Positions 695-63,307 of a stretch of DNA of 64,000 nt are shown piece after piece. The notes below the pieces were generated by a model. It made no database searches, was not told where the DNA came from, and saw only the letters and a list, made by a program, of their open reading frames with translations. The position numbers and the translations under genes are program-made. Where the stretch lies: assembly GCF_035594765.1 (NCBI RefSeq), contig NC_085842.1, forward strand, positions 22,234,782 through 22,298,781, read 5' to 3'. Within the stretch, counting starts at the first letter, position 1; every line of letters starts with the position of its first letter. Origin of the DNA: Anolis carolinensis (lineage: Eukaryota).

Positions 695-830
695 NNNNNN
701 NNNNNNNNNNNNNNNNNNNNNNNNNNNNNNNNNNNNNNNNNNNNNNNNNNNNNNNNNNNNNNNNNNNNNNNNNNNNNNNNNNNNNNNNNNNNNNNNNNNN
801 NNNNNNNNNNNNNNNNNNNNNNNNNNNNNN
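695..830. other. Assembly gap
   Basis: Run of N; others at 33533-33691 and 62693-62859. Confidence 1.
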
Positions 831-2489: not shown

Positions 2490-3420
2490 TTGTGTTGTCC
2501 AAGGCTTTCATGGCCTTAAATCACTAGGTTGATTTGCTTTTTCCGGGCTGTATGGCCGTGTTCCAGAAGCATTCTCTCCTGGTGTTTTGCCCACATCTAT
2601 GACAGGCACCCTCAGAGGTTGTGAGGTCTGTTGGAAAATAGGCAAGGGAGGTTTATTTATCTGTGGAATAAAGTCAAGGGTGGGAGAAATAACTCTTGTC
2701 TGAGGCAAGTGTAAATGTTGCATTTGGCCACCTTGATTAGCATTGAGTAGCCTTGCAGCTTCAAAGCCTGGCTGCTTCCCACCGAGGGGAATCCTTTGTT
2801 GGGAAGAGTTAGCTGGCCCTGATTGTTTCTTGTCTGGAATTCTATTAGAGGTTTTTTAAAACTAGATTTGGTTTATTTTCATGGTTTCCTCTTTTCTGTT
2901 GAAATTGTCCACATGCTTGTGGACTTCAATGGCTCCTGTGTGTAGTCTGACATGGTGTTTGTGAGAGTGGTCCAGCATTTCTGTGTTCTCAAATAGTATG
3001 TTGTGTCCAGGTTGGTTCATCAGGTGCTCTGCTATGACTGACTTCTCTGGTTGAGTTAGTCCGCAGTGCCTTTCATATTCCTTGATTCGTGTTTGGGTGC
3101 TGCATTTGGTGGACACAGCATATTATTTGAGAACACAGAACTCCAAAAACCACCATGTTATGAACTCCACAAGCATCTGGACAATGCCAACAGAAAGGAG
3201 GAAACCATGAAAATGAACAAAATCTGGCTACCAGTATTTTTTTAAAAAATCTGAAATCAGGACAGTAAATAAAGGGCAACAGTTTTTTAAAAAAGAGAAT
3301 GAAACAATCAGGGCCAGCTAACACCTCCCAATAAAGGATTCACCCAGGCAGGAAGCAGCCAGGATTTGAAATTGCAAAGACATTCAGTACTAATCATGCC
3401 GGCCAATTGCAATATTCACA
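2490..3420. mobile_element. Penelope-like element fragment with inverted arrangement
   Basis: Minus-strand GIY-YIG C-terminal peptide (RIKEYERH..S.IAEH..H...F.NTE.LD) to ~3110, then the same family on the plus strand. Other copies at ~11180-11550, 22348-23071, 34068-34295, 35485-35663, 42765-43100, 43580-43962, 53755-54205, 56390-56626. Confidence 0.8.
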
Positions 3421-4368
3421 CATGCATTTAAAGATCTTAATAAAGTATCTCAAGGGCCTATTTTAACACACACACACACAATGCGTATTTTAATATATGT
3501 ATTTTGTAGAAATACATTTTAATATGTCCTATATATGTATATATGTGTGTGTGTGCATCTTTGTGTTGTCGAAGGCTTTCATAGCCTGAATCACTGGGCT
3601 GGTGTGAGTTTTATGGGAATAAAAAACAGACGCAGAAGAATATGAGTGGAAACTTGTATGTATATATCATATTTAATAACCTGGACCTACCTGTGCTGAA
3701 AACCCAGCACTGCCAATGTTGGCATTTTATAAAAACATAAGATCCAAGACATGAATAATCCTGTTGTTTTTCTAAAAATAATGTGATCAAATTCAAACCA
3801 GCACCACATTCCTTGCTACCTCAGTGTAGTCTAGGAGAGTGATTTAGGGGCATCCCATGTAACAATTAGTGTTTCCTCATAGTCTGACCAATTCCTCTTC
3901 TTTGAGAATTCACTATTGCAAGATATTAAGTTGAAACTTTTTGTTACAGCAGGAGCAGTTTTATCATCTCTCTTCCATCTCCTGGATCTCTTGCAAGATT
4001 TAATGTCAGGGACCTTTCAAAACATCTATGTCTTCGAAACCATTTTTCTTTTGAAGAGCTCTGCCTCTGATGAAAGCCTTTCCTACTAACAGGTTTAGAT
4101 GTGCCACTTCTCGCCTGATGCATAATTAGTTGCATTCTTTTTCCTGAAGAGTTTTTTCCCACATCAGTCCAAGCATTCAAACAGTTGTACCATGTGAGTT
4201 TTCATACGAATTAACAGTTCTGAAGAGATGCCAAAAGTTCTCACACAGGTCCTCTCCTGTTCAACAAGGTCAGATTGACAGCTGAAGCCTTTCCCACATC
4301 AGGAGCATATAAACAAGTGGACTCCTTAACATGACATTAGGTTACGGGGCCAAACAAAACACTTCCCA

Positions 4369-4422
4369 CTATATCTTCTCCCCTGTGTGGATTCTCTGAT
4401 GGACTCTGAGAGCAGAGCCATG
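4369..4422 (-). pseudogene. Displaced 3' end of ZNF exon A (HGSALRVHQRIHTGEKI*)
   Basis: Matches the end of paralog B; lies on the far side of the Gypsy element. Confidence 0.9.
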
Positions 4423-4793
4423 TGTCATGGAGCCAGATCCCAGGGCTGAATTTCCAAGACCTGAATCTGACTTCATAACATAAACAATCCTGCAAGCACC
4501 TGGCGGGAGAAGATAAAATGAGCCTGGGAACTCAGAGTTGAAAGTGTAAACAATTATAATTGCTGTAGTGTGTGGGAATAGAAATCATGGTGGTAATGTG
4601 ATCCCGAAGGTGGGGTTTGATGATGATATTTGCGTGTGATATTACGTTGCATCAGAAGTGATAAAATTAGATGTATGTAAACATTAGGTCATTCTCGACT
4701 TTTCCAAAGTCATGTATTCTTCAATAAAGATTGTGTTTGAGAGCAGCTATCTTTGATCTGCGTTCAGACTGGTCCTTTGAAGTGAGCCTGACA
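4423..4793 (+). repeat. 5' LTR (371 bp)
   Basis: No difference from 9741-10111 found by eye; GATAAAA 4660-4666, Inr-like TCATTCT around A4691, AATAAA 4723-4728. Confidence 0.97.
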
Positions 4794-4795
4794 TT

Positions 4796-4807
4796 AAAGT
4801 CGAGAAT
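4796..4807 (+). promoter_or_regulatory. Self-priming primer-binding site
   Basis: AAAGTCGAGAAT, 2 nt after the 5' LTR, is the exact reverse complement of ATTCTCGACTTT (4691-4702) at the predicted transcript start; there is no TGG (tRNA CCA) complement. Confidence 0.9.
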
Positions 4808-4847
4808 CCATTTCTCACCCTCCTGCGGAATTCGCAGTGAAGTGATA

Positions 4848-7800
4848 ATGAGCGAAGAAGGAGATCAAAGCCCAAATGAGGCAGAGAGGCCTTTGCAAGG
4901 GGCCCGGCCGAAGAGAGAAGAAACGCTGCAAGCCATAGCTTCCTCTACGGGGTACCCCAGGCCGAACGGCGTGACCCAGAGAATTCCCAGGGGAGGAAGA
5001 GGCGTCTCTGCGGCTGCAGAAACCAGTTGGGGATCTGGAGGAAGTATGCCGGAGACCGTGGCCCTGCGGTTATCCATCCTGGAAACTAATTTATCCAGGC
5101 TGTCGGAAACCGTGGGGAGATTGGTGCCATTATTGGAAGAGAATCTCCAAAAGGAGCCCAGCCGATATGGCGCCGAGAGAGAACCAAGTAAAGGAGATTG
5201 GAGCCAGAGGGGCCAGCGAGCGTCAACGCAGAGTCCCGTGGCGGCAAGGGACGAGGGAGATGAGGAATACTGGCAGGAGCTGCAGTTCCGGGACAGAATG
5301 GCGCGAGAAGTGGAGCGTCAGCGAGCCCTGGGAACTCTGAGGCCGCCATCTCCAACAGAGCTCCCAACCCCCCGAATGGGCGTCGGGGTGGAAAGGCCAC
5401 TGGGGCCAGGGATCGGGTCCAGTGGATTCGCAGACGAAGGCGGAGAGGAGCGGGGGATCCAGGAAGAGGAGGAGGATGTGCCGTACGACGAGGAAAGGCG
5501 AGATGAGGGGGCTACAGCGAGGCCAGTATGCGGATGGGCGGAAGAGCCGACAGCGGCGGCAGACTTTCGGGAGCCGCGCAGAATGACCACCGGAGTGGGG
5601 CGCGGCGTGTTCCAAGGAGCCGCCCGAGGAAACCTGATGCAACCCTTCCCCATGCCTCCCAGACAGCAGCAACGGGCTGCAGAATGGATGCCTAGAAGGG
5701 AAGATCTCAAACTAGAATACGGAGGGGAATCAAATGAACTGAACTTTTTTCTAATTAGCATCAGAGGATACATGGAAGACAATGCACACACATTCCCCTC
5801 CGAGGCAAGCAGGGTTCGAGCCATCGGCAACACACTAAAGCGAGGAGCAGCCAGCTGGTATGTGCAGCTTCATGCCAGACGCGACCCATGCCTGAGGTCA
5901 GTGCCCCGCTTCCTCGCCGCACTGGAAAACCGGTTCAGAGACCGGCTAGAGCAATTGAGGGCTCGAGACCAGCTGAAAGGAATAAAGCAGAGGGACAAAA
6001 CAGTACCCGAGTACGCAGAAGAATTCCTCCACCTCGCGGAAAGGGTACCAGAATGGTCTGAAGTGACCAAAGTGGAATTATTTAAAGAGGGACTACGCCC
6101 CGAGATTTTCAGCTGGGCAGCGCACAGAGACGACCCCGAAACGCTCCAGGGATGGATTCAACTAGCGGGGCGCGTCGAATCCACCCTGGCCCAAGTAAAG
6201 CGCTTCAGGAGCGGCAGCGGCCAGCAAAGACCAGTGGCGAGAGGTCGAGGAGAAACGAGGAAGCAGGAAAGACCCGGAGGGAGGCCGGGGATTCCCTCCA
6301 AAGGAGACGACAACAAACCTAAACCGGGATGCTTTGTATGTGGGAAGACGGGCCATCGAGCAGCAGAATGCTGGGCCCGGAAGGGGGAGCCGCCAAAAGC
6401 CCCAAAGCCCAAGCCAGCAACCGGGAGGCGCGCGGAAGAGGAGGTGCAGGCCCCAGAATCTTCAAAAAAACTGGTGAGTCGGGACAAACGCATGATAGTA
6501 GTGCCAATCTGCCTCTCAGGGCTAGAAAATCGGGCCACCTGCAAGGCATTTGTGGATTGTGGGTGTTCCAGAAACATTATAACCCCGGAGTTAGCAGGAG
6601 CGCTGAAATGCCAGCAGATGGCGCTTGACTCCCCAATTGCATTTTCGCAGCTAGATGGATCAGTCGCTGCTGGGGAAGTGTCTACAAAGGAAATACGGGA
6701 AATCCCATGTAAAATAGGCAAATGGGAAGGAAGGATATCCTTTGTGATAGCCCCTATTGCCACATACCACGTAATATTAGGGATACCATGGCTCGAACAG
6801 GCAAATCCTGAAGTAGATTGGAGAGGAAAAAGCCTAGCATTCAAAGAACAGCAGATGCAATGGGAGATAAGCAAAATTGCGGAAGAGGAGGACGAGGAAG
6901 ATGAAGCAGGGGAAATAGACCCACAGCTATTGCCACCTGAATACAGAGACTTTGTGGATGTTTTCAATCAGAAAGAGGCCAGTAAATTGCCTCCCAAAAG
7001 GAATATAGAAGTAGAAATTGAAATAACCCCAGGAGCAAACTTACCAAAACCAAAAGTGTATCCCATGTCTGTGCAGGAGAAGGAGGAATTGAGGAAATAC
7101 ATTGATAAAAACCTGGCGCGAGGCTTCATTAAGCCATCCAATTCTCCTCTCGGGGCCCCAGTGTTATTTAGGAGAAAGAAAGACAACTCCCTAAGATTGT
7201 GCATTGATTATCGAAATTTAAACGCAATTACTAAGGACAATAAATACCCTATGCCCTTAGTCAAGGATTTAATTACCGTATTGAAGAAAGGGAGCATATT
7301 TACTAAACTGGATTTAATTGAAGCGTATCATAAATTAAGGATCAAACCGGAGGATACTTGGAAAACTGCATTTTCCTGCGCATTCGGCCATTTTGAATAT
7401 GAAATTTTGCCTTTCGGGTTAAAAAACGGAGGCGGCTGCTTTATGCAGCTTATAAATGAAATATTACACCCGTTATTGTACAGAGGGGTGTTCATATTTC
7501 TTGATGATATCTTGATCGTATCTGAAGATAAGGAAAAGCACGTAAAATTGGTCCGGGAAGTTTTGCAGAGACTAAGAGAAGCAAAGCTGTACGCAAAACT
7601 GTCCAAATGTGAATTTAATAAAACTCAAATTGACTTTCTGGGGTATCGGATATCTCCAGAAGGGTTAGCTATGGATCCAGCTAAAGTAGCAGATGTGAAA
7701 GAATGGGGAGTGCCTCAAACAAGGAGGCAATTACAATCATTTCTGGGGTTTGCAAATTTTTACAGACCCTTCATAAAAGGCTTCGCGCAAATAACCGCAC

Positions 7801-9665
7801 CCCTTACAGAACTTTTAAAAACAAAAGGGAAAGGGGAAACAGCAAAAGTGAAAGCTCCTGGCGCCAAACTGAGTTGGACGCCAGAATGCCAAAAGGCATT
7901 CGAAACCTTAAAAGAATGCTTCACTGAAGGACCCATCCTAAAACACCCCGATATCAGGAGCCCTTTCATAATCCATTGCGATGCCTCAGACTGTGCGTAC
8001 GGGGCAGTACTATTGCAAAAAGATCAAAATGGGAACTTAAAACCCTGTGGATATTTGTCACGGAAGTTCAGCGAAACTGAAAAAAGTTGGCCAATATGGG
8101 AAAAAGAGGCATTAGCCATATTAAAAGCCTTAGAATGCTGGCGACACTTCCTCGAAGGAAGCGGAATCCCATTTGAAATTTGGTCTGACCATAAGAACCT
8201 CCAGTATTTAAAGTCTCCTAGAAAATTGTCCCCCAAACAAATTAGATGGGCGCAATACTTCAGCAGATTCGATTTCCAATTAAAGTTTTTTCAAGGGAAG
8301 CAGAATGTCTTGGCAGATGCTCTTTCACGCATGCCTCAACACGAAGGCATAACCACAGCAAAAGAGGGGACAATATTCTCTGACAAACAATGGGGCTTAG
8401 CCGTCAGGACCAGAGCACAAACCCAAAAGGAGGACACGGCTTTTGTTGAACTCGGCGGGGAAGAAAACTGGGGAAATGAACTGAAACAGTATTATGAAGG
8501 TGATCAATGGATCGCATCCAACGCAGAAAAGGGGGAACAGAAGGGGGGATTTTGGTTTGTAAACAAGAAACTGTATATCCCAGCAATGTTAAGGATTAAG
8601 ATTCTGCATCGTTTCCACAACAACCAGAGCGCTGGTCATACAGGAATTACAAAAACAACAAAGGCAATAGCAAAGCATTGTTGGTGGCCAGGAATGAGGA
8701 AGGACATAAAGAATCATGTTGTTCAATGTGATGATTGTGCCAGAAATAAATCGGGGGGAGGGAAGCCTATGGGATTGTTACAAACAGTAGCGGAACCTAC
8801 CAGACCTTGGGAATGTGTAGCTATGGACTTTGTGGGAGAACTGCCGGTTAGCAAAGGACATCGTTATATCTGGACAGTATTAGACCTGTTTTCTAAACAG
8901 GCCCACTTTATAGCGCTGACGAAACTACCATCGGCTGAGAAACTAGCTGAATTGTACATAAATCATATTTACAAACTACATGGATGTCCCAGTAGAGTAG
9001 TTAGTGACAGAGGAGTACAGTTCACAGCAAAATTTTGGGAAAAATTCTTGGAAATGCTAGGAGCAGAAAGGAGTCTAAGTTCTGCTTTTCACCCCATGAC
9101 AAACGGGGCGGTAGAACGTACTCAGCAAACGCTTGGGCAGTTCCTTCGAATGTACTCTAACGTGAGACAAAATGACTGGTCTAGGTGGTTGGCTTTTGCG
9201 GAACTAGCCTTTAATTCAACTATACATTCAGCAACAAATAAAACCCCCTTTGAAGTAGTTTACGGGTATGAAATACAGCCTTTACCCCAGTTGCCAAGGT
9301 GGACAGAAAATGAGGAAACAGAGGCAGGGAAATGGAAAACGCAAATGCTAGAATGCTGGAGTCAAGTGACTGCATCCTTAAAGGAAGCGCACAAAAAGTA
9401 TAAAGCGTTCGCAGACAGAAAGAGGGTGGAAGGCGATAAATTAAATGAAGGAGATCTAGTGTGGTTAAGTACCCAAAACATCAAATTGGGGCTACCTTCG
9501 AGAAAACTGGGCCCCAAATATATTGGACCATTCAGAATACAAGGTGTTATCAATGAAGTGACTTTCCAGTTGGCATTGCCAAAAAGTTTAGGGAAAATAC
9601 ACCCAGTATTCCATCGCAGCTTACTGAAAAAGTATATGGGGACTTTGGACAAAATGGACACATAG
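4848..9665 (+). CDS. Gag-Pol polyprotein, 1605 aa, single reading frame
   Basis: First ATG after the LTR at 4848; retrotransposon/PEG10-like capsid, CCHC knuckle CFVCGKTGHRAAEC, protease FVDCGCS, RT PFGLKN/FLDD, RNase H (CDAS, EKEAL, SDHKNL), integrase HHCC + DDE (MDFV, SDRG, ERTQQ) + GPY/F (GPF..HPVFH); no chromodomain. Confidence 0.96.
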   Translation: MSEEGDQSPNEAERPLQGARPKREETLQAIASSTGYPRPNGVTQRIPRGGRGVSAAAETSWGSGGSMPETVALRLSILETNLSRLSETVGRLVPLLEENLQKEPSRYGAEREPSKGDWSQRGQRASTQSPVAARDEGDEEYWQELQFRDRMAREVERQRALGTLRPPSPTELPTPRMGVGVERPLGPGIGSSGFADEGGEERGIQEEEEDVPYDEERRDEGATARPVCGWAEEPTAAADFREPRRMTTGVGRGVFQGAARGNLMQPFPMPPRQQQRAAEWMPRREDLKLEYGGESNELNFFLISIRGYMEDNAHTFPSEASRVRAIGNTLKRGAASWYVQLHARRDPCLRSVPRFLAALENRFRDRLEQLRARDQLKGIKQRDKTVPEYAEEFLHLAERVPEWSEVTKVELFKEGLRPEIFSWAAHRDDPETLQGWIQLAGRVESTLAQVKRFRSGSGQQRPVARGRGETRKQERPGGRPGIPSKGDDNKPKPGCFVCGKTGHRAAECWARKGEPPKAPKPKPATGRRAEEEVQAPESSKKLVSRDKRMIVVPICLSGLENRATCKAFVDCGCSRNIITPELAGALKCQQMALDSPIAFSQLDGSVAAGEVSTKEIREIPCKIGKWEGRISFVIAPIATYHVILGIPWLEQANPEVDWRGKSLAFKEQQMQWEISKIAEEEDEEDEAGEIDPQLLPPEYRDFVDVFNQKEASKLPPKRNIEVEIEITPGANLPKPKVYPMSVQEKEELRKYIDKNLARGFIKPSNSPLGAPVLFRRKKDNSLRLCIDYRNLNAITKDNKYPMPLVKDLITVLKKGSIFTKLDLIEAYHKLRIKPEDTWKTAFSCAFGHFEYEILPFGLKNGGGCFMQLINEILHPLLYRGVFIFLDDILIVSEDKEKHVKLVREVLQRLREAKLYAKLSKCEFNKTQIDFLGYRISPEGLAMDPAKVADVKEWGVPQTRRQLQSFLGFANFYRPFIKGFAQITAPLTELLKTKGKGETAKVKAPGAKLSWTPECQKAFETLKECFTEGPILKHPDIRSPFIIHCDASDCAYGAVLLQKDQNGNLKPCGYLSRKFSETEKSWPIWEKEALAILKALECWRHFLEGSGIPFEIWSDHKNLQYLKSPRKLSPKQIRWAQYFSRFDFQLKFFQGKQNVLADALSRMPQHEGITTAKEGTIFSDKQWGLAVRTRAQTQKEDTAFVELGGEENWGNELKQYYEGDQWIASNAEKGEQKGGFWFVNKKLYIPAMLRIKILHRFHNNQSAGHTGITKTTKAIAKHCWWPGMRKDIKNHVVQCDDCARNKSGGGKPMGLLQTVAEPTRPWECVAMDFVGELPVSKGHRYIWTVLDLFSKQAHFIALTKLPSAEKLAELYINHIYKLHGCPSRVVSDRGVQFTAKFWEKFLEMLGAERSLSSAFHPMTNGAVERTQQTLGQFLRMYSNVRQNDWSRWLAFAELAFNSTIHSATNKTPFEVVYGYEIQPLPQLPRWTENEETEAGKWKTQMLECWSQVTASLKEAHKKYKAFADRKRVEGDKLNEGDLVWLSTQNIKLGLPSRKLGPKYIGPFRIQGVINEVTFQLALPKSLGKIHPVFHRSLLKKYMGTLDKMDT

Positions 9666-9688
9666 AGTTATTGTTTGATTTGTTTCAG

Positions 9689-9796
9689 AACTATGATGAA
9701 AGAAGAACCGAAGAGGAGGACGAAGAAAACGAGGGCGCCATGTCATGGAGCCAGATCCCAGGGCTGAATTTCCAAGACCTGAATCTGACTTCATAA
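9689..9796 (+). CDS. Predicted second exon of spliced Gag (NYDERRTEEEDEENEGAMSWSQIPGLNFQDLNLTS*)
   Basis: Acceptor TTGTTTGATTTGTTTCAG ends at 9688; in frame with the phase-0 donor CTG|GTGAGT at 6473/6474; open for 35 codons into U3. Confidence 0.6.
   Translation, partial: NYDERRTEEEDEENEGAMSWSQIPGLNFQDLNLTS
9698..9735 (+). promoter_or_regulatory. Polypurine tract region
   Basis: Purine-rich GAAAGAAGAACCGAAGAGGAGGACGAAGAAAACGAGGG ending 5 nt before the 3' LTR. Confidence 0.75.
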
Positions 9797-10111
9797 CATA
9801 AACAATCCTGCAAGCACCTGGCGGGAGAAGATAAAATGAGCCTGGGAACTCAGAGTTGAAAGTGTAAACAATTATAATTGCTGTAGTGTGTGGGAATAGA
9901 AATCATGGTGGTAATGTGATCCCGAAGGTGGGGTTTGATGATGATATTTGCGTGTGATATTACGTTGCATCAGAAGTGATAAAATTAGATGTATGTAAAC
10001 ATTAGGTCATTCTCGACTTTTCCAAAGTCATGTATTCTTCAATAAAGATTGTGTTTGAGAGCAGCTATCTTTGATCTGCGTTCAGACTGGTCCTTTGAAG
10101 TGAGCCTGACA
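9741..10111 (+). repeat. 3' LTR (371 bp)
   Basis: Direct repeat of 4423-4793, preceded by the polypurine tract and followed by TSD CCATG. Confidence 0.97.
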
Positions 10112-11114
10112 CCATGACTAAAAGTACTGCCACACTGTGAGCACTGGAAGATTTCCCTGGAGTCCGAACATTTGGGCGTCATATCCGTGTGAGTCCGCAC
10201 ATGGAAAACCAGCTCTGAAATGACTTCAAAGGCTTTCCTGCAGACAAAACAGGCTAATGAATCTCCTCTTGAGTGGGTTCTCTCATGTTCGATAAGTTCA
10301 GACTTTTTGTTGAAGCTCTTCCCACAGTAGGAACACATCGCCATGTGCGTTCTTTCGTGGGCTCTCAAGCGCGGGCTGCAGCTGAAACACATCCCGCAAT
10401 ACGAACATTTGTACTGGTTTTCGCTGGTGTGAGTTCTCCGATGGACTCTGAGGCTTGAGAAGGTCCCAAAGTTTTCTGCGCACTTTGAACATTTATAAGG
10501 TTTCTCCCCTCTGTGGAGCCCCTGGTGCTGAAGGAAACTCGATATCTTCATGTATGCCTTCCCGCATATTGGACACACGTGTATTTTCTTCCTTCTCTGT
10601 TTTTCCTGCTGGGTGTTGTAGACAAAGGTATTCCCGCAAGTTGAGCATCTGTGTGGCTTCTGGCCCATGTGGATTCTTTCGCTTTCTCCGCAGTTCGAAC
10701 AGGTGTACAGTTTCTCCCCGACGTGGCTTCTTTCATGAGACAGAAGGTCAGAGCTGCTGCTGAAGCTTTGGCCACAATGCCAGCACTGATATGGCTTCTC
10801 CTTCTCCTCTTCATGGGGGCTGTTGGGCATTGTGAGGTGCAAACTCAGACCAAAGTTTTCGTCACGTTCCTCATATTTCACATTCTGAACCTCCTGGATG
10901 TTGGGTTCATTTTCGGTTTTGCAAACCACCTGTGGGCAAACCAACTGACACTCTCTCTCCTCTTCATCCCCTCCATTCTGCCTCTCTGGCTTATACTGAC
11001 TCTCATCAGGTTCTTGATCTGTTTTCAATAACATCACTGGGAGCTCCATTTGCTCAGGATGCTCCAAGATGGGTTTCTTCTCCTCCTCACTTTCTTCCAT
11101 CCACCCTCCATCTG
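10039..11114 (-). pseudogene. ZNF exon A: duplicated C2H2 terminal exon, last finger broken by the Gypsy insertion
   Basis: Near-identical to 24738-25774; acceptor CAGCAG at ~11115; 6 intact fingers, then the frame runs into the antisense LTR; no SCAN exon of its own upstream. Confidence 0.8.
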
Positions 11115-11645
11115 CTGAAAGAGAGACAAATATACAAAACATGAAACAGAGCTTTCCAAGATGAGTTAACTAGACAACACAACATAAATAAAGTAAATCA
11201 AAAACAACATGCTGAAAACAGAGGATTTCCAGACATGAATCAATAAGGGGCAGTAATGTCTCCGAACCAATGATTCCCCCAGTCAGGAAGAAACCAGGAC
11301 ATTAGCAAGGCCATTAATGCTAATCAAGGTGATTAAATACAACATTCATACTGGCCTCCAACAGACAAGAGTTCTTTCTCCCACCCTGGACCTTCCACAG
11401 ATATATAAACTTCCTTGCTTAGTTTTTTCCAATATACCCCACAACCTCTGAGGATGCCTGCCATAGATGTGGGTGAAACGTACTGAGAGAATGCTTCTGG
11501 AACATGGCCATACAGCCCGGAAAACACACAACAACCCTGTGATTCTGGCCATAAAACATAAAACATAAAAAAAACAATTCCTCAACCTTATTTTCACTAA
11601 TTTCACAGATAATATGAGGATATGTCCAATTTTGACCATTTATAG

Positions 11646-62040: not shown

Positions 62041-63307
62041 TTAGCTAATCACCTTCAAGAAAAGGCAATGACCAGCTATCCTAGGACAGGAAGGAACTGG
62101 CTGAGTTGAGGGACCTTCATGGAATGAATTCAACATTCCAGAAAGGTCTCATTCTGTTTTCCACGGCAACTGAAAAAGACTATAGCCACTAACACAGGTG
62201 AATTTCAGTACACCAGGATTAAGGTTATGTGGCCCAGCATGTTCCCACTGATCTCTTCTACTAGGTGAGTCAACGGGAACGCCTGTGGTTTGCCACCCTG
62301 TTTGCCAGGAGCAATGCCCAAAGGACAACTCTGCTCAAGAGGCATACATTGAGGTGAATGAGTGAGTTTGGGATCCTTTTGCAATTTGCTGCTGAATTCA
62401 AAAGACTTCTTTCCCATAAGATTCTCAGTCCATTATTATTATTATTATTTGAAACACAACAAGATGAGTCCACAGCAGACACTCTACTGACTGTTGTACT
62501 GGATCACATGCCAGACACTTCCCAAGTGTCTAGGACTGTGTGATGTATCGGTGAATAATGTGTGCAGATCCCAGTAAGGTGACCTTCTGCAGCTGGCAGG
62601 TGGGGATTTTGTCAGCGCCGATTGCGTTTAAGTGCAGGCCAAGGTCTTTGGGCACTGCACCCAATGTGCCGATCACCACTGGGACCACCTTGNNNNNNNN
62701 NNNNNNNNNNNNNNNNNNNNNNNNNNNNNNNNNNNNNNNNNNNNNNNNNNNNNNNNNNNNNNNNNNNNNNNNNNNNNNNNNNNNNNNNNNNNNNNNNNNN
62801 NNNNNNNNNNNNNNNNNNNNNNNNNNNNNNNNNNNNNNNNNNNNNNNNNNNNNNNNNNNCCCTTCTCACCCGAAGGGACTCAGGGCGGCGTACAATTGGC
62901 AACAATTCAATGCCGATACATCATTAAAAACAACAACATATAAAAATATATTACAACCAATTAAATACAGTATAAAATATAAAACATAAAACATATGCTT
63001 AAAATCCGTTCGTCCAATATCCTCCAACTTTATATAATAATATAATCATCATCATTATCGTCATCATTATTTATTTATTTATTTATTTACAGCATTTATA
63101 TTCCGCCCTTCTCTCCCCGAAGGGGACTCAGGGCGGATCACATTACACATATAGGCAAACATTCAATGCCTTTTAACATAGAACAAAGACAAACAAACAT
63201 AGGCTCCGAGCGGGCCTCGAACTCATGACCTCTTGGTCAGAGTGATTCATTGCAGTGATTCATTGCAGCTGCTCTCCAGCCTGCGCCACAGCCCGAGCCC
63301 ATCATCA

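What the first reader, a model, noticed from the sequence alone, without database searches (positions are those of the whole stretch)
6471..9796. Gypsy element appears to splice out its entire pol as an intron, making Gag with an acidic tail encoded by the PPT and LTR
Seen: gag and pol share one frame with no stop, so the element needs another way to make excess Gag. A consensus donor CTG|GTGAGT (6473/6474, phase 0) lies at the end of Gag, after the CCHC knuckle and before the protease. A U-rich acceptor TTGTTTGATTTGTTTCAG| ends at 9688, 23 nt after the pol stop. Joining them removes 3215 nt (all of PR-RT-RH-IN) and continues in frame through NYDERRTEEEDEENEGAMSWSQIPGLNFQDLNLTS* (stop 9796, inside U3), giving a 577-aa Gag. 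Established: spliced gag RNAs are known for Ty1/copia elements such as Drosophila copia, whereas sushi-ichi/PEG10 use -1 frameshifting. Inference: this lineage controls the Gag:Pol ratio by splicing, and its polypurine tract doubles as coding sequence for an acidic Gag tail.
Basis: partly seen in the sequence, partly recalled or inferred. Interest (0 to 1): 0.9.

Follow-up and report, generated by a model that had tools for sequence, protein, structure and literature searches.

The report
Lizard Gypsy element splices out pol
A young, intact Gypsy-type jumping gene of the green anole carries conserved splice signals that remove all its enzyme genes as one 3.2-kb intron, giving an mRNA for the coat protein (Gag) alone. 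This trick was known for copia-type elements of flies and plants, and I found no report of it for vertebrate Gypsy elements.

Summary
The element (window 4423-10111) is an intact Ty3/gypsy retrotransposon with identical 371-bp LTRs, a 5-bp target duplication and one 1605-codon gag-pol frame.

Joining the donor (6473|6474) to the acceptor (9688|9689) removes 3215 nt and gives a 577-aa Gag. NCBI RefSeq already annotates exactly this two-exon CDS at this locus (LOC134297058, Anolis carolinensis). It annotates the same plan in clusters holding about 160 distinct protein models from diverged families.

I fetched nine loci from five squamate species:
- The donor sits at the same alignment column in all nine (NTG|GTRRGT, phase 0).
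- It is the most conserved 9-mer of 210 windows, above all at third codon positions.
- A pyrimidine tract plus AG lies between the pol stop and the polypurine tract in all nine. The annotated models use it in eight.

Limits:
- I saw no RNA junction directly. The one reads call gave only short contigs, without this joint.
- The acidic tail is specific to Anolis. Snake tails differ.
- Two frameshifting relatives also keep GTGAGT, and the one that could be checked (a gecko element) has no acceptor.

Verdict: probably a real Gag-only splice, a new variant of the copia strategy. Its role in the Gag:Pol ratio is inferred. The scan had already flagged this on other copies in this genome (s1-517347 and others).

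The parts
4418..4422 (+). Target-site duplication CCATG, 5' copy
   Evidence: The same 5 nt occur at 10112-10116. An uninterrupted paralog of the target ZNF sequence at 24707-24846 carries a single CCATG.
4423..4793 (+). 5' LTR (371 bp, TG...CA)
   Evidence: 100% identical to 9741-10111. AATAAA at 4723.
4691..4702 (+). Inferred start of R and of the transcript: a 12-mer complementary to the PBS
   Evidence: ATTCTCGACTTT is the reverse complement of 4796-4807. That this marks the transcription start is inferred from Tf1-type self-priming.
4796..4807 (+). Self-priming primer-binding site (not a tRNA site)
   Evidence: It is complementary to LTR position 269-280. The same arrangement is seen in five of the six Anolis loci.
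4848..6473 (+). Exon 1 coding part: Gag (542 codons; capsid and CCHC knuckle)
   Evidence: Pfam Retrotrans_gag, Ty3_capsid and zf-CCHC. Identical to residues 1-542 of RefSeq P0001.
6474..6479 (+). Splice donor GTGAGT (exon side CTG)
   Evidence: Rank 1 of 212 GT sites. Same alignment column in 9 loci. Most conserved 9-mer of 210 windows, third-position identity 0.84 against 0.34 overall.
6474..9688 (+). 3215-nt intron that holds all of PR-RT-RNase H-IN (pol coding part 6474-9665)
   Evidence: The Pfam domain order is protease, RVT_1, RT_RNaseH, Integrase_H2C2, rve, SH3_Tf2-1. The RefSeq CDS skips exactly this stretch.
9666..9688 (+). Spacer after the pol stop, with pyrimidine tract and acceptor ...TTTCAG
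   Evidence: Rank 2 of 480 AG sites. A Y-tract plus AG sits at the same place in the other eight single-ORF loci, in sequences that do not align between families.
9689..9796 (+). Exon 2 coding part: 35-codon tail and stop (stop at 9794-9796, in U3)
   Evidence: Translation. Identical to residues 543-577 of P0001.
9698..9740 (+). Polypurine tract region, read as the acidic part of the tail
   Evidence: A purine-rich run directly upstream of the 3' LTR. Its role as plus-strand primer is inferred from position.
9741..10111 (+). 3' LTR; its first 56 nt are coding in the spliced model
   Evidence: Identical to the 5' LTR.
10112..10116 (+). Target-site duplication CCATG, 3' copy

Best explanation
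The element is a recently inserted, apparently autonomous Ty3/gypsy retrotransposon of Anolis carolinensis. It belongs to a self-priming lineage whose Gag resembles PEG10 and sushi.

Its full-length RNA (inferred start near 4691, poly(A) signal at 4723 in the LTR) has two roles. It is the genome, and it is the mRNA for a single Gag-Pol polyprotein.

A fraction of this RNA is spliced by the host spliceosome from the donor at 6473|6474 to the acceptor at 9688|9689. This removes all of pol. The resulting mRNA of about 2.2 kb encodes Gag (542 aa) plus 35 residues read from the polypurine tract and the first 56 nt of U3. The stop lies in the last exon, so the message should escape nonsense-mediated decay.

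This supplies Gag in excess over Pol without frameshifting or readthrough, as in Drosophila copia.

Shown here: the sites, the frame, their conservation, and the public annotation. Inferred: that splicing happens in vivo at a useful rate, and that its purpose is Gag:Pol stoichiometry.
For: 1. RefSeq protein P0001 (LOC134297058, 577 aa) is 100% identical to exon 1 plus exon 2. Its CDS range equals window 4848-9796. Locus L001 is identical to window 3348-11296.
2. Clusters holding about 160 distinct RefSeq models share Gag-only lengths. The 13 I read from A. carolinensis and A. sagrei all end with the same kind of tail.
3. All nine fetched single-ORF-type loci solve uniquely as two exons with GT-AG and a phase-0 donor. 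Eight of them use an acceptor 19-35 nt after the pol stop, or directly before the polypurine tract where pol is broken. Species: A. carolinensis, A. sagrei, Pantherophis guttatus, Ahaetulla prasina, Crotalus tigris.
4. The donor falls in one alignment column, about 27 residues before the protease active site, inside a protein linker that is otherwise hypervariable. It is the most conserved 9-mer of 210 windows among seven families: nucleotide identity 0.83 against 0.47, third positions 0.84 against 0.34.
5. By the approximate score the donor ranks first in 7 of 9 elements and second in the other two. The acceptor ranks first or second in 7 of 9.
6. The Crotalus tigris model joins the same donor to a 12-nt terminal coding exon 10 kb away. 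That is hard to explain without spliced reads, so the donor is probably used in vivo.
7. Among family copies, indels in coding parts are in-frame or rare. None lies in exon 2, while two lie within 10 nt after its stop (table 4). This is weak evidence.
8. The gecko relative that uses -1 frameshifting has no acceptor-like site in its stop-to-LTR spacer (best rank 120 of 352).
Against: - No junction-spanning RNA was seen. The only reads call returned Logan contigs of about 100-200 nt from runs whose RNA status is a guess. No 6473->9689 joint was among the 15 joints listed; 17 more were not shown.
- In two of those runs contig depth over gag is lower than over pol, the opposite of an abundant Gag mRNA. 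The tool warns that such depth cannot rank parts of a gene.
- I could not read the evidence lines of the RefSeq models, so RNA-seq support for the intron is inferred.
- GTGAGT is also conserved, and ranks first, in frameshifting relatives. Part of its conservation may therefore have another cause.
- A T-rich box upstream of the polypurine tract is common in retroelements for plus-strand priming (own knowledge). It could mimic an acceptor tract.
- The tail sequence is not conserved outside Anolis.
Confidence: 0.68

Rival explanations
1. The sites are real and sometimes used, but the spliced product is not there to raise the Gag:Pol ratio. It could be a minor by-product. It could be a regulator or copy-number brake, comparable to the truncated Ty1 Gag p22. 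Or its value could lie in an RNA that still carries R, PBS and PPT.
For: - The tail is not conserved between anoles and snakes.
- Contig depth does not show gag in excess in two of the three possible RNA runs.
- Frameshifting relatives, which already make excess Gag, keep the donor too.
- Tf1, also a single-ORF self-priming element, adjusts the ratio by protein degradation (own knowledge).
Against: - The acceptor co-occurs with the single-ORF layout in 9 of 9 loci and is missing in the one frameshifting element that could be checked.
- The spliced message encodes a complete capsid plus nucleocapsid Gag.
- No 6473->9689 joint was among those listed for the likely DNA run, so pol-less copies were not seen.
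Confidence: 0.15
2. There is no meaningful splicing. The RefSeq models are products of the annotation pipeline. GTRAGT is kept because it encodes a needed Val-Ser at the start of the protease region, or because it binds U1 for another purpose. The T-rich stretch before the polypurine tract is a priming aid that happens to end in AG.
For: - No direct junction evidence.
- GTGAGT is kept in frameshifting relatives that lack the acceptor.
- In three families the AG merges into the purine run of the polypurine tract.
Against: - Third-position identity at the donor is 0.84 against 0.34 overall. Ser is AGT in 10 of 11 sequences, and the one exception (GGT, Gly) still keeps GT at +5/+6. This points to a constraint on the nucleotides.
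- The spacers do not align between families, yet each is pyrimidine-rich and ends in YAG.
- An ab initio gene finder has no reason to skip a 1063-codon open pol frame (inference).
- The Crotalus model with a 12-nt terminal coding exon 10 kb away implies real spliced reads from this donor.
Confidence: 0.12
3. Gag excess comes from -1 ribosomal frameshifting or transcriptional slippage at the A7 run (A AAA AAC-like) just before the donor, and not from splicing.
For: The A7 run at 6464-6470 resembles a slippery heptamer.
Against: - Gag and pol are in the same frame, so a shift would not be needed to reach pol.
- The A7 run is private to this copy; the contigs covering that site have G at 6465.
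- RefSeq relatives read SSEKL at that spot.
Confidence: 0.02

Closest known systems
Drosophila copia 2-kb spliced gag RNA (Yoshioka et al. 1990, as cited in PMC5580714)
   Same: Single gag-pol ORF. An intron of about 3 kb covers all of pol. The spliced subgenomic mRNA encodes Gag only.
   Different: Copia belongs to Ty1/copia (Pseudoviridae) and lives in an insect. Here the element is a vertebrate Ty3/gypsy, the acceptor sits directly before the polypurine tract, and the new C-terminus is read from the polypurine tract and U3. The spliced RNA was shown experimentally for copia, not here.
Plant Ty1/copia shGAG strategy: Arabidopsis EVD and barley BARE1 (PMC5580714, PMC3735527)
   Same: Alternative splicing of a single-ORF element gives a dedicated Gag mRNA. 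The splice sites are conserved across families.
   Different: The plant introns are short, remove the protease, and create a stop by frameshift. EVD couples splicing to premature termination. Here the whole pol is removed in frame. Oberlin et al. report no such conserved splicing in Arabidopsis Ty3/gypsy elements.
Sushi-ichi, PEG10 and the squamate relatives that use -1 frameshifting
   Same: Related Gag (Pfam Ty3_capsid / PEG10-type capsid).
   Different: Those have gag and pol in different frames and make excess Gag by inefficient frameshifting. The window element has one frame, no frameshift signal shared by the family, and an acceptor that the gecko element lacks.
Tf1 of Schizosaccharomyces pombe
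   Same: Single gag-pol ORF and self-priming PBS complementary to the 5' end of the transcript (own knowledge of Tf1).
   Different: Tf1 is reported to reach excess Gag by preferential degradation of Pol products, not by splicing (own knowledge). Tf1 has a chromodomain; none was detected here.
Cer1 of C. elegans, with its spliced cerv mRNA (PMC10309623)
   Same: A Ty3/gypsy element with no stop between gag and pol whose genomic RNA carries host-type splice sites that are used.
   Different: The Cer1 splice builds a five-exon regulator (CERV) from gag pieces and a 3' ORF. It does not give a complete Gag.

Membership tests
Ty3/gypsy (Metaviridae) LTR retrotransposon | Direct LTRs ending TG...CA, flanked by a short target-site duplication | tested here: met
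   371-bp LTRs, 100% identical. TSD CCATG. An empty-site paralog carries a single CCATG.
Ty3/gypsy (Metaviridae) LTR retrotransposon | Domain order Gag(CCHC)-PR-RT-RNase H-IN | tested here: met
   Pfam hits lie in that order along the ORF.
Tf1/sushi group | Self-priming: PBS complementary to the 5' end of the element's own RNA | tested here: met
   A 12-nt complement between 4796-4807 and 4691-4702. Equivalent pairs occur in five of the six Anolis loci. The transcription start itself was not mapped.
Tf1/sushi group | Chromodomain at the C-terminus of integrase | tested here: not met
   No chromodomain family at E <= 0.01. The protein ends 9 residues after the SH3_Tf2-1 match.
Sushi-ichi/PEG10-type expression | gag and pol in different frames with a -1 slippery heptamer | tested here: not met
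   One frame of 1605 codons. The A7 run is private to this copy.
copia-type Gag-only splicing strategy | Single gag-pol ORF | tested here: met
   An uninterrupted gag-pol ORF was read in 6 of the 9 single-ORF-type loci; the other three have a broken pol.
copia-type Gag-only splicing strategy | Donor after gag and acceptor after pol, so that the intron equals pol | tested here: met
   Sequence, RefSeq CDS structures, and conservation.
copia-type Gag-only splicing strategy | Spliced subgenomic RNA detected | tested here: inconclusive
   Contig-level reads showed no such joint, but the contigs are too short and the run type is uncertain. A search with the junction part of the stored RefSeq protein was blank. 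RefSeq models imply support, but their evidence lines could not be read.
copia-type Gag-only splicing strategy | Gag translated from the spliced RNA is what supplies the excess Gag | not testable with these tools
   Needs expression experiments.

The most novel reading that the evidence does not exclude
A whole squamate clade of self-priming Ty3/gypsy elements has swapped -1 frameshifting for host-spliceosome control of Gag:Pol. It did so by pairing an older conserved GTRAGT at the gag-protease linker with a newly evolved acceptor wedged between the pol stop and the polypurine tract. As a result, replication signals (the polypurine tract and the integrase-recognised LTR end) are at the same time protein-coding. 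The strategy has been kept since before anoles and snakes diverged.
Probability: 0.45. Interest if true: 0.75.

Novelty: new variant of a known kind. Interest (0 to 1): 0.62.

Why it matters
How single-ORF LTR retrotransposons make more Gag than Pol is an old open point for Ty3/gypsy. The literature I could search describes splicing for this purpose only in Ty1/copia (PMC5580714, PMC3735527, PMC12786077).

If confirmed, this would show independent evolution of the same solution in a vertebrate Ty3/gypsy lineage. That lineage is the sister kind of the ancestors of PEG10 and the RTL genes.

It would also explain more than a hundred 'uncharacterized protein' gene models in anole and snake RefSeq as transposon Gag mRNAs.

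Finally, it would offer a natural case where a polypurine tract and an LTR terminus are under both replication and coding constraint.

Tried and rejected
1. Direct RNA test. The look-up of sequencing runs found 20 holders, none on record as RNA. Read laying on three possible RNA runs and one likely DNA run returned only short Logan contigs. No 6473->9689 joint was among those listed. This neither supports nor excludes splicing.
2. No such joint was listed in the likely DNA run, and all fetched loci keep the intron. No support, but 17 joints were not shown.
3. A search with the last 108 residues of the stored RefSeq protein P0001, for short junction-spanning fragments from assemblies. One unrelated small hit.
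4. Word-based protein searches, with a single protein and with an alignment, found Anolis only. The exhaustive profile search was needed to reach snakes and geckos.
5. Gecko (Paroedura) and Logan Gag-only hits with acidic ends looked like further spliced cases. They turned out to be frameshift-type elements.
6. Frameshift or slippage at the A7 run was rejected.
7. The 35-codon open tail as evidence was rejected as weak, because purine tracts lack stop codons.
8. I did not build or search a joined exon1+exon2 sequence. Exons were handled by reference. The joined product appears only as the stored public protein P0001 that a search returned.
9. No MaxEntScan or SpliceAI was available. The scores come from a rough matrix written from general knowledge.
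Full report
**What is there.** Window 4423-10111 is a complete LTR retrotransposon.
- The two 371-bp LTRs (4423-4793 and 9741-10111) are identical and end TG...CA.
- They are flanked by a 5-bp duplication, CCATG. An uninterrupted paralog of the target sequence at 24707-24846 has a single CCATG, which fixes the boundaries.
- From the ATG at 4848 one frame runs 1605 codons to TAG at 9663-9665.
- Pfam places Retrotrans_gag/Ty3_capsid and a CCHC knuckle in the first 542 residues. After them come protease, RVT_1, RNase H, Integrase_H2C2, rve and SH3_Tf2-1.
- There is no tRNA-type primer-binding site. Instead, 4796-4807 is the exact complement of 4691-4702 in the LTR. This is the Tf1-type self-priming arrangement.
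- Locus L001, from assembly GCA_035594765.1 of Anolis carolinensis, is identical to window 3348-11296.

**The observation.**
- The donor is CTG|GTGAGT with the exon ending at 6473, in phase 0.
- The acceptor ...TTTCAG ends at 9688, 23 nt after the pol stop. The intron is 3215 nt.
- Exon 2 (9689-9796) gives 35 residues and a stop inside U3, for a 577-aa product.
- By a rough position-weight score written from general knowledge, the donor ranks 1 of 212 GT sites and the acceptor 2 of 480 AG sites on the sense strand.
- The length of the open tail is not informative in itself, because purine tracts have few stops.
- The A7 run is private to this copy. The contigs covering that site in four sequencing runs have G at 6465, a substitution that does not change the frame.

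**Public annotation already holds this model.**
- A protein search with exon 1 alone returned RefSeq protein P0001 (LOC134297058, A. carolinensis). It is 577 aa, 100% identical, and ends with exactly the predicted tail.
- Its gene range is window 4848-9796.
- Eighteen further clusters of 566-578 aa, and clusters of 529, 414, 401/402, 473 and 477 aa, together hold about 160 distinct RefSeq sequences from A. carolinensis and A. sagrei.
- Gag identity to the window falls to about 55% in these clusters. All 13 sequences I read end in the same kind of tail.
- I could not read the evidence lines of these records, so RNA-seq support is inferred.
- My reasoning for that inference is that a gene finder has no cause to skip a 1063-codon open pol frame unless spliced reads tell it to.

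**Conservation.** I fetched nine loci of the single-ORF type (some with pol now broken) from five species.
- The species are A. carolinensis (four loci), A. sagrei (two), Pantherophis guttatus, Ahaetulla prasina and Crotalus tigris.
- Each CDS solves uniquely as two exons with GT-AG and a phase-0 donor.
- Six loci have an uninterrupted gag-pol ORF of 1430-1605 codons. Four have identical LTRs.
- In a codon alignment the donor falls in one column, [L/M]|V[S/G], about 27 residues before the protease active site. The surrounding protein linker is otherwise hypervariable.
- Among seven diverged families the 9-mer NTG|GTRRGT is the most conserved of 210 windows. Nucleotide identity is 0.83 against 0.47 overall, and third codon positions 0.84 against 0.34. 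That is the signature of a constraint on the RNA, not on the protein.
- The stretch between the pol stop and the polypurine tract is 19-35 nt. It does not align between families, yet in all nine it is pyrimidine-rich and ends in YAG.
- By the rough score the donor ranks first in 7 of 9 elements, and the acceptor first or second in 7 of 9.
- The C. tigris model uses the same donor but a 12-nt terminal coding exon 10 kb downstream. This is best explained by real spliced reads, so the donor is probably active. Its native acceptor-like site is still present.

**What weakens the story.**
- *No junction RNA was seen.* All listed runs are kept as Logan contigs, and their RNA status is a guess. The family is so repetitive that the contigs are about 100-200 nt. 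None of the 15 listed joints is 6473->9689, and 17 more were not shown. In two runs contig depth over gag is lower than over pol, though the tool warns against reading depth this way.
- *The tail is not conserved outside Anolis.* The four Anolis families all read the polypurine tract in the Glu/Asp frame and then Met-Ser from the LTR start. The snakes end VMSQK* (before the tract) and DIASFPRGDACQAWKPY*. In snakes the acidic patch is encoded in exon 1, directly before the donor.
- *Frameshifting relatives keep the donor-like site.* They are a gecko element with G GGA AAC and a Logan contig with U UUA AAC. Both also keep GTGAGT (Val-Ser) at the homologous place, 41-47 nt after their gag stop. 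It ranks first of 245 in the gecko element. The gecko element has no acceptor-like site in its stop-to-LTR spacer, where the best rank is 120 of 352.
- *Consequence.* The donor-like motif is therefore older than the single-ORF layout, and part of its conservation may have another cause. It is the acceptor that tracks the single-ORF layout, but that rests on a single frameshifting element.

**Mechanism proposed.**
- The full-length RNA, from about 4691 to the 3' LTR poly(A) site, serves as genome and as Gag-Pol mRNA.
- A spliced fraction of about 2.2 kb encodes Gag plus the tail.
- Its stop lies in the terminal exon, so it should escape nonsense-mediated decay.
- This gives Gag in excess, as in Drosophila copia.
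- The spliced RNA keeps R, PBS and the polypurine tract, so pol-less copies could in principle arise. I saw none.

**Comparison with what is known.**
- Gag-only splicing is documented for Drosophila copia, barley BARE1 and Arabidopsis EVD with other Ty1/copia elements.
- Oberlin et al. state that Arabidopsis Ty3/gypsy elements show no such conserved splicing (PMC5580714; PMC3735527; PMC12786077).
- Ty3/gypsy elements are known to splice for other products, such as Cer1 CERV (PMC10309623).
They found no description of a Gag-only splice in a vertebrate Ty3/gypsy element. A study of metaviral capsid genes that used the anole genome does not mention it.
- I therefore class it as a new variant of a known kind.

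**Earlier scan notes.** The scan had already flagged the same feature on other copies in this genome. Note s1-517347 carries a follow-up that reached a similar conclusion. I treated those notes as leads only.

Noticed in passing
window 10039-11142, minus strand: The element sits inside the last coding exon of a SCAN-C2H2 zinc-finger gene. The annotated ZNF reading frame now runs 73 nt into the 3' LTR and takes its last 24 residues and its stop from it. An intact paralog at 24707-24846 shows the empty site.
   Followed up: partly
window 6528-6560; also L002-L006: The protease active-site motif reads D-C-G (FVDCGCS) in all four Anolis families, where D-S/T-G is usual. The snake relatives have DSG or DTG. 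The Anolis copies are young, with identical LTRs, so this unusual protease is presumably active.
   Followed up: no
window 9757-9790; L007 1495-1527: The U3-encoded end of the tail (PGLNFQDLN) resembles the natural Gag C-terminus of a frameshifting relative (EPLNFQSLP), whose LN codons lie in its U UUA AAC slippery site. This may be chance or a remnant.
   Followed up: no
L012 10290-10375 (Paroedura picta); L007 1490-1580 (Logan contig, species unknown): Relatives use -1 frameshifting at G GGA AAC (the PEG10 heptamer) and at U UUA AAC. Both keep a top-scoring GTGAGT 41-47 nt after the gag stop, within the distance that would escape nonsense-mediated decay if it were spliced.
   Followed up: partly
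L010 2730 and 12745 (Crotalus tigris): The RefSeq model joins the element's gag-end donor to a 12-nt terminal coding exon 10 kb downstream, outside the element. This would be a chimeric transcript driven by the transposon donor.
   Followed up: partly
cluster of P0017: P0059: One spliced Gag model is named 'replication protein A 32 kDa subunit isoform X2' in RefSeq. It is probably a transposon copy mis-assigned to the RPA2 locus.
   Followed up: no
window 6464-6470: The A7 run just before the donor is private to this copy; the other copies seen have G at 6465. It forms an in-frame slippery-looking heptamer with no evident role.
   Followed up: yes
window 695-830, 33533-33691, 62693-62859: Three runs of N (assembly gaps or masked stretches). 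They were left untouched.
   Followed up: no
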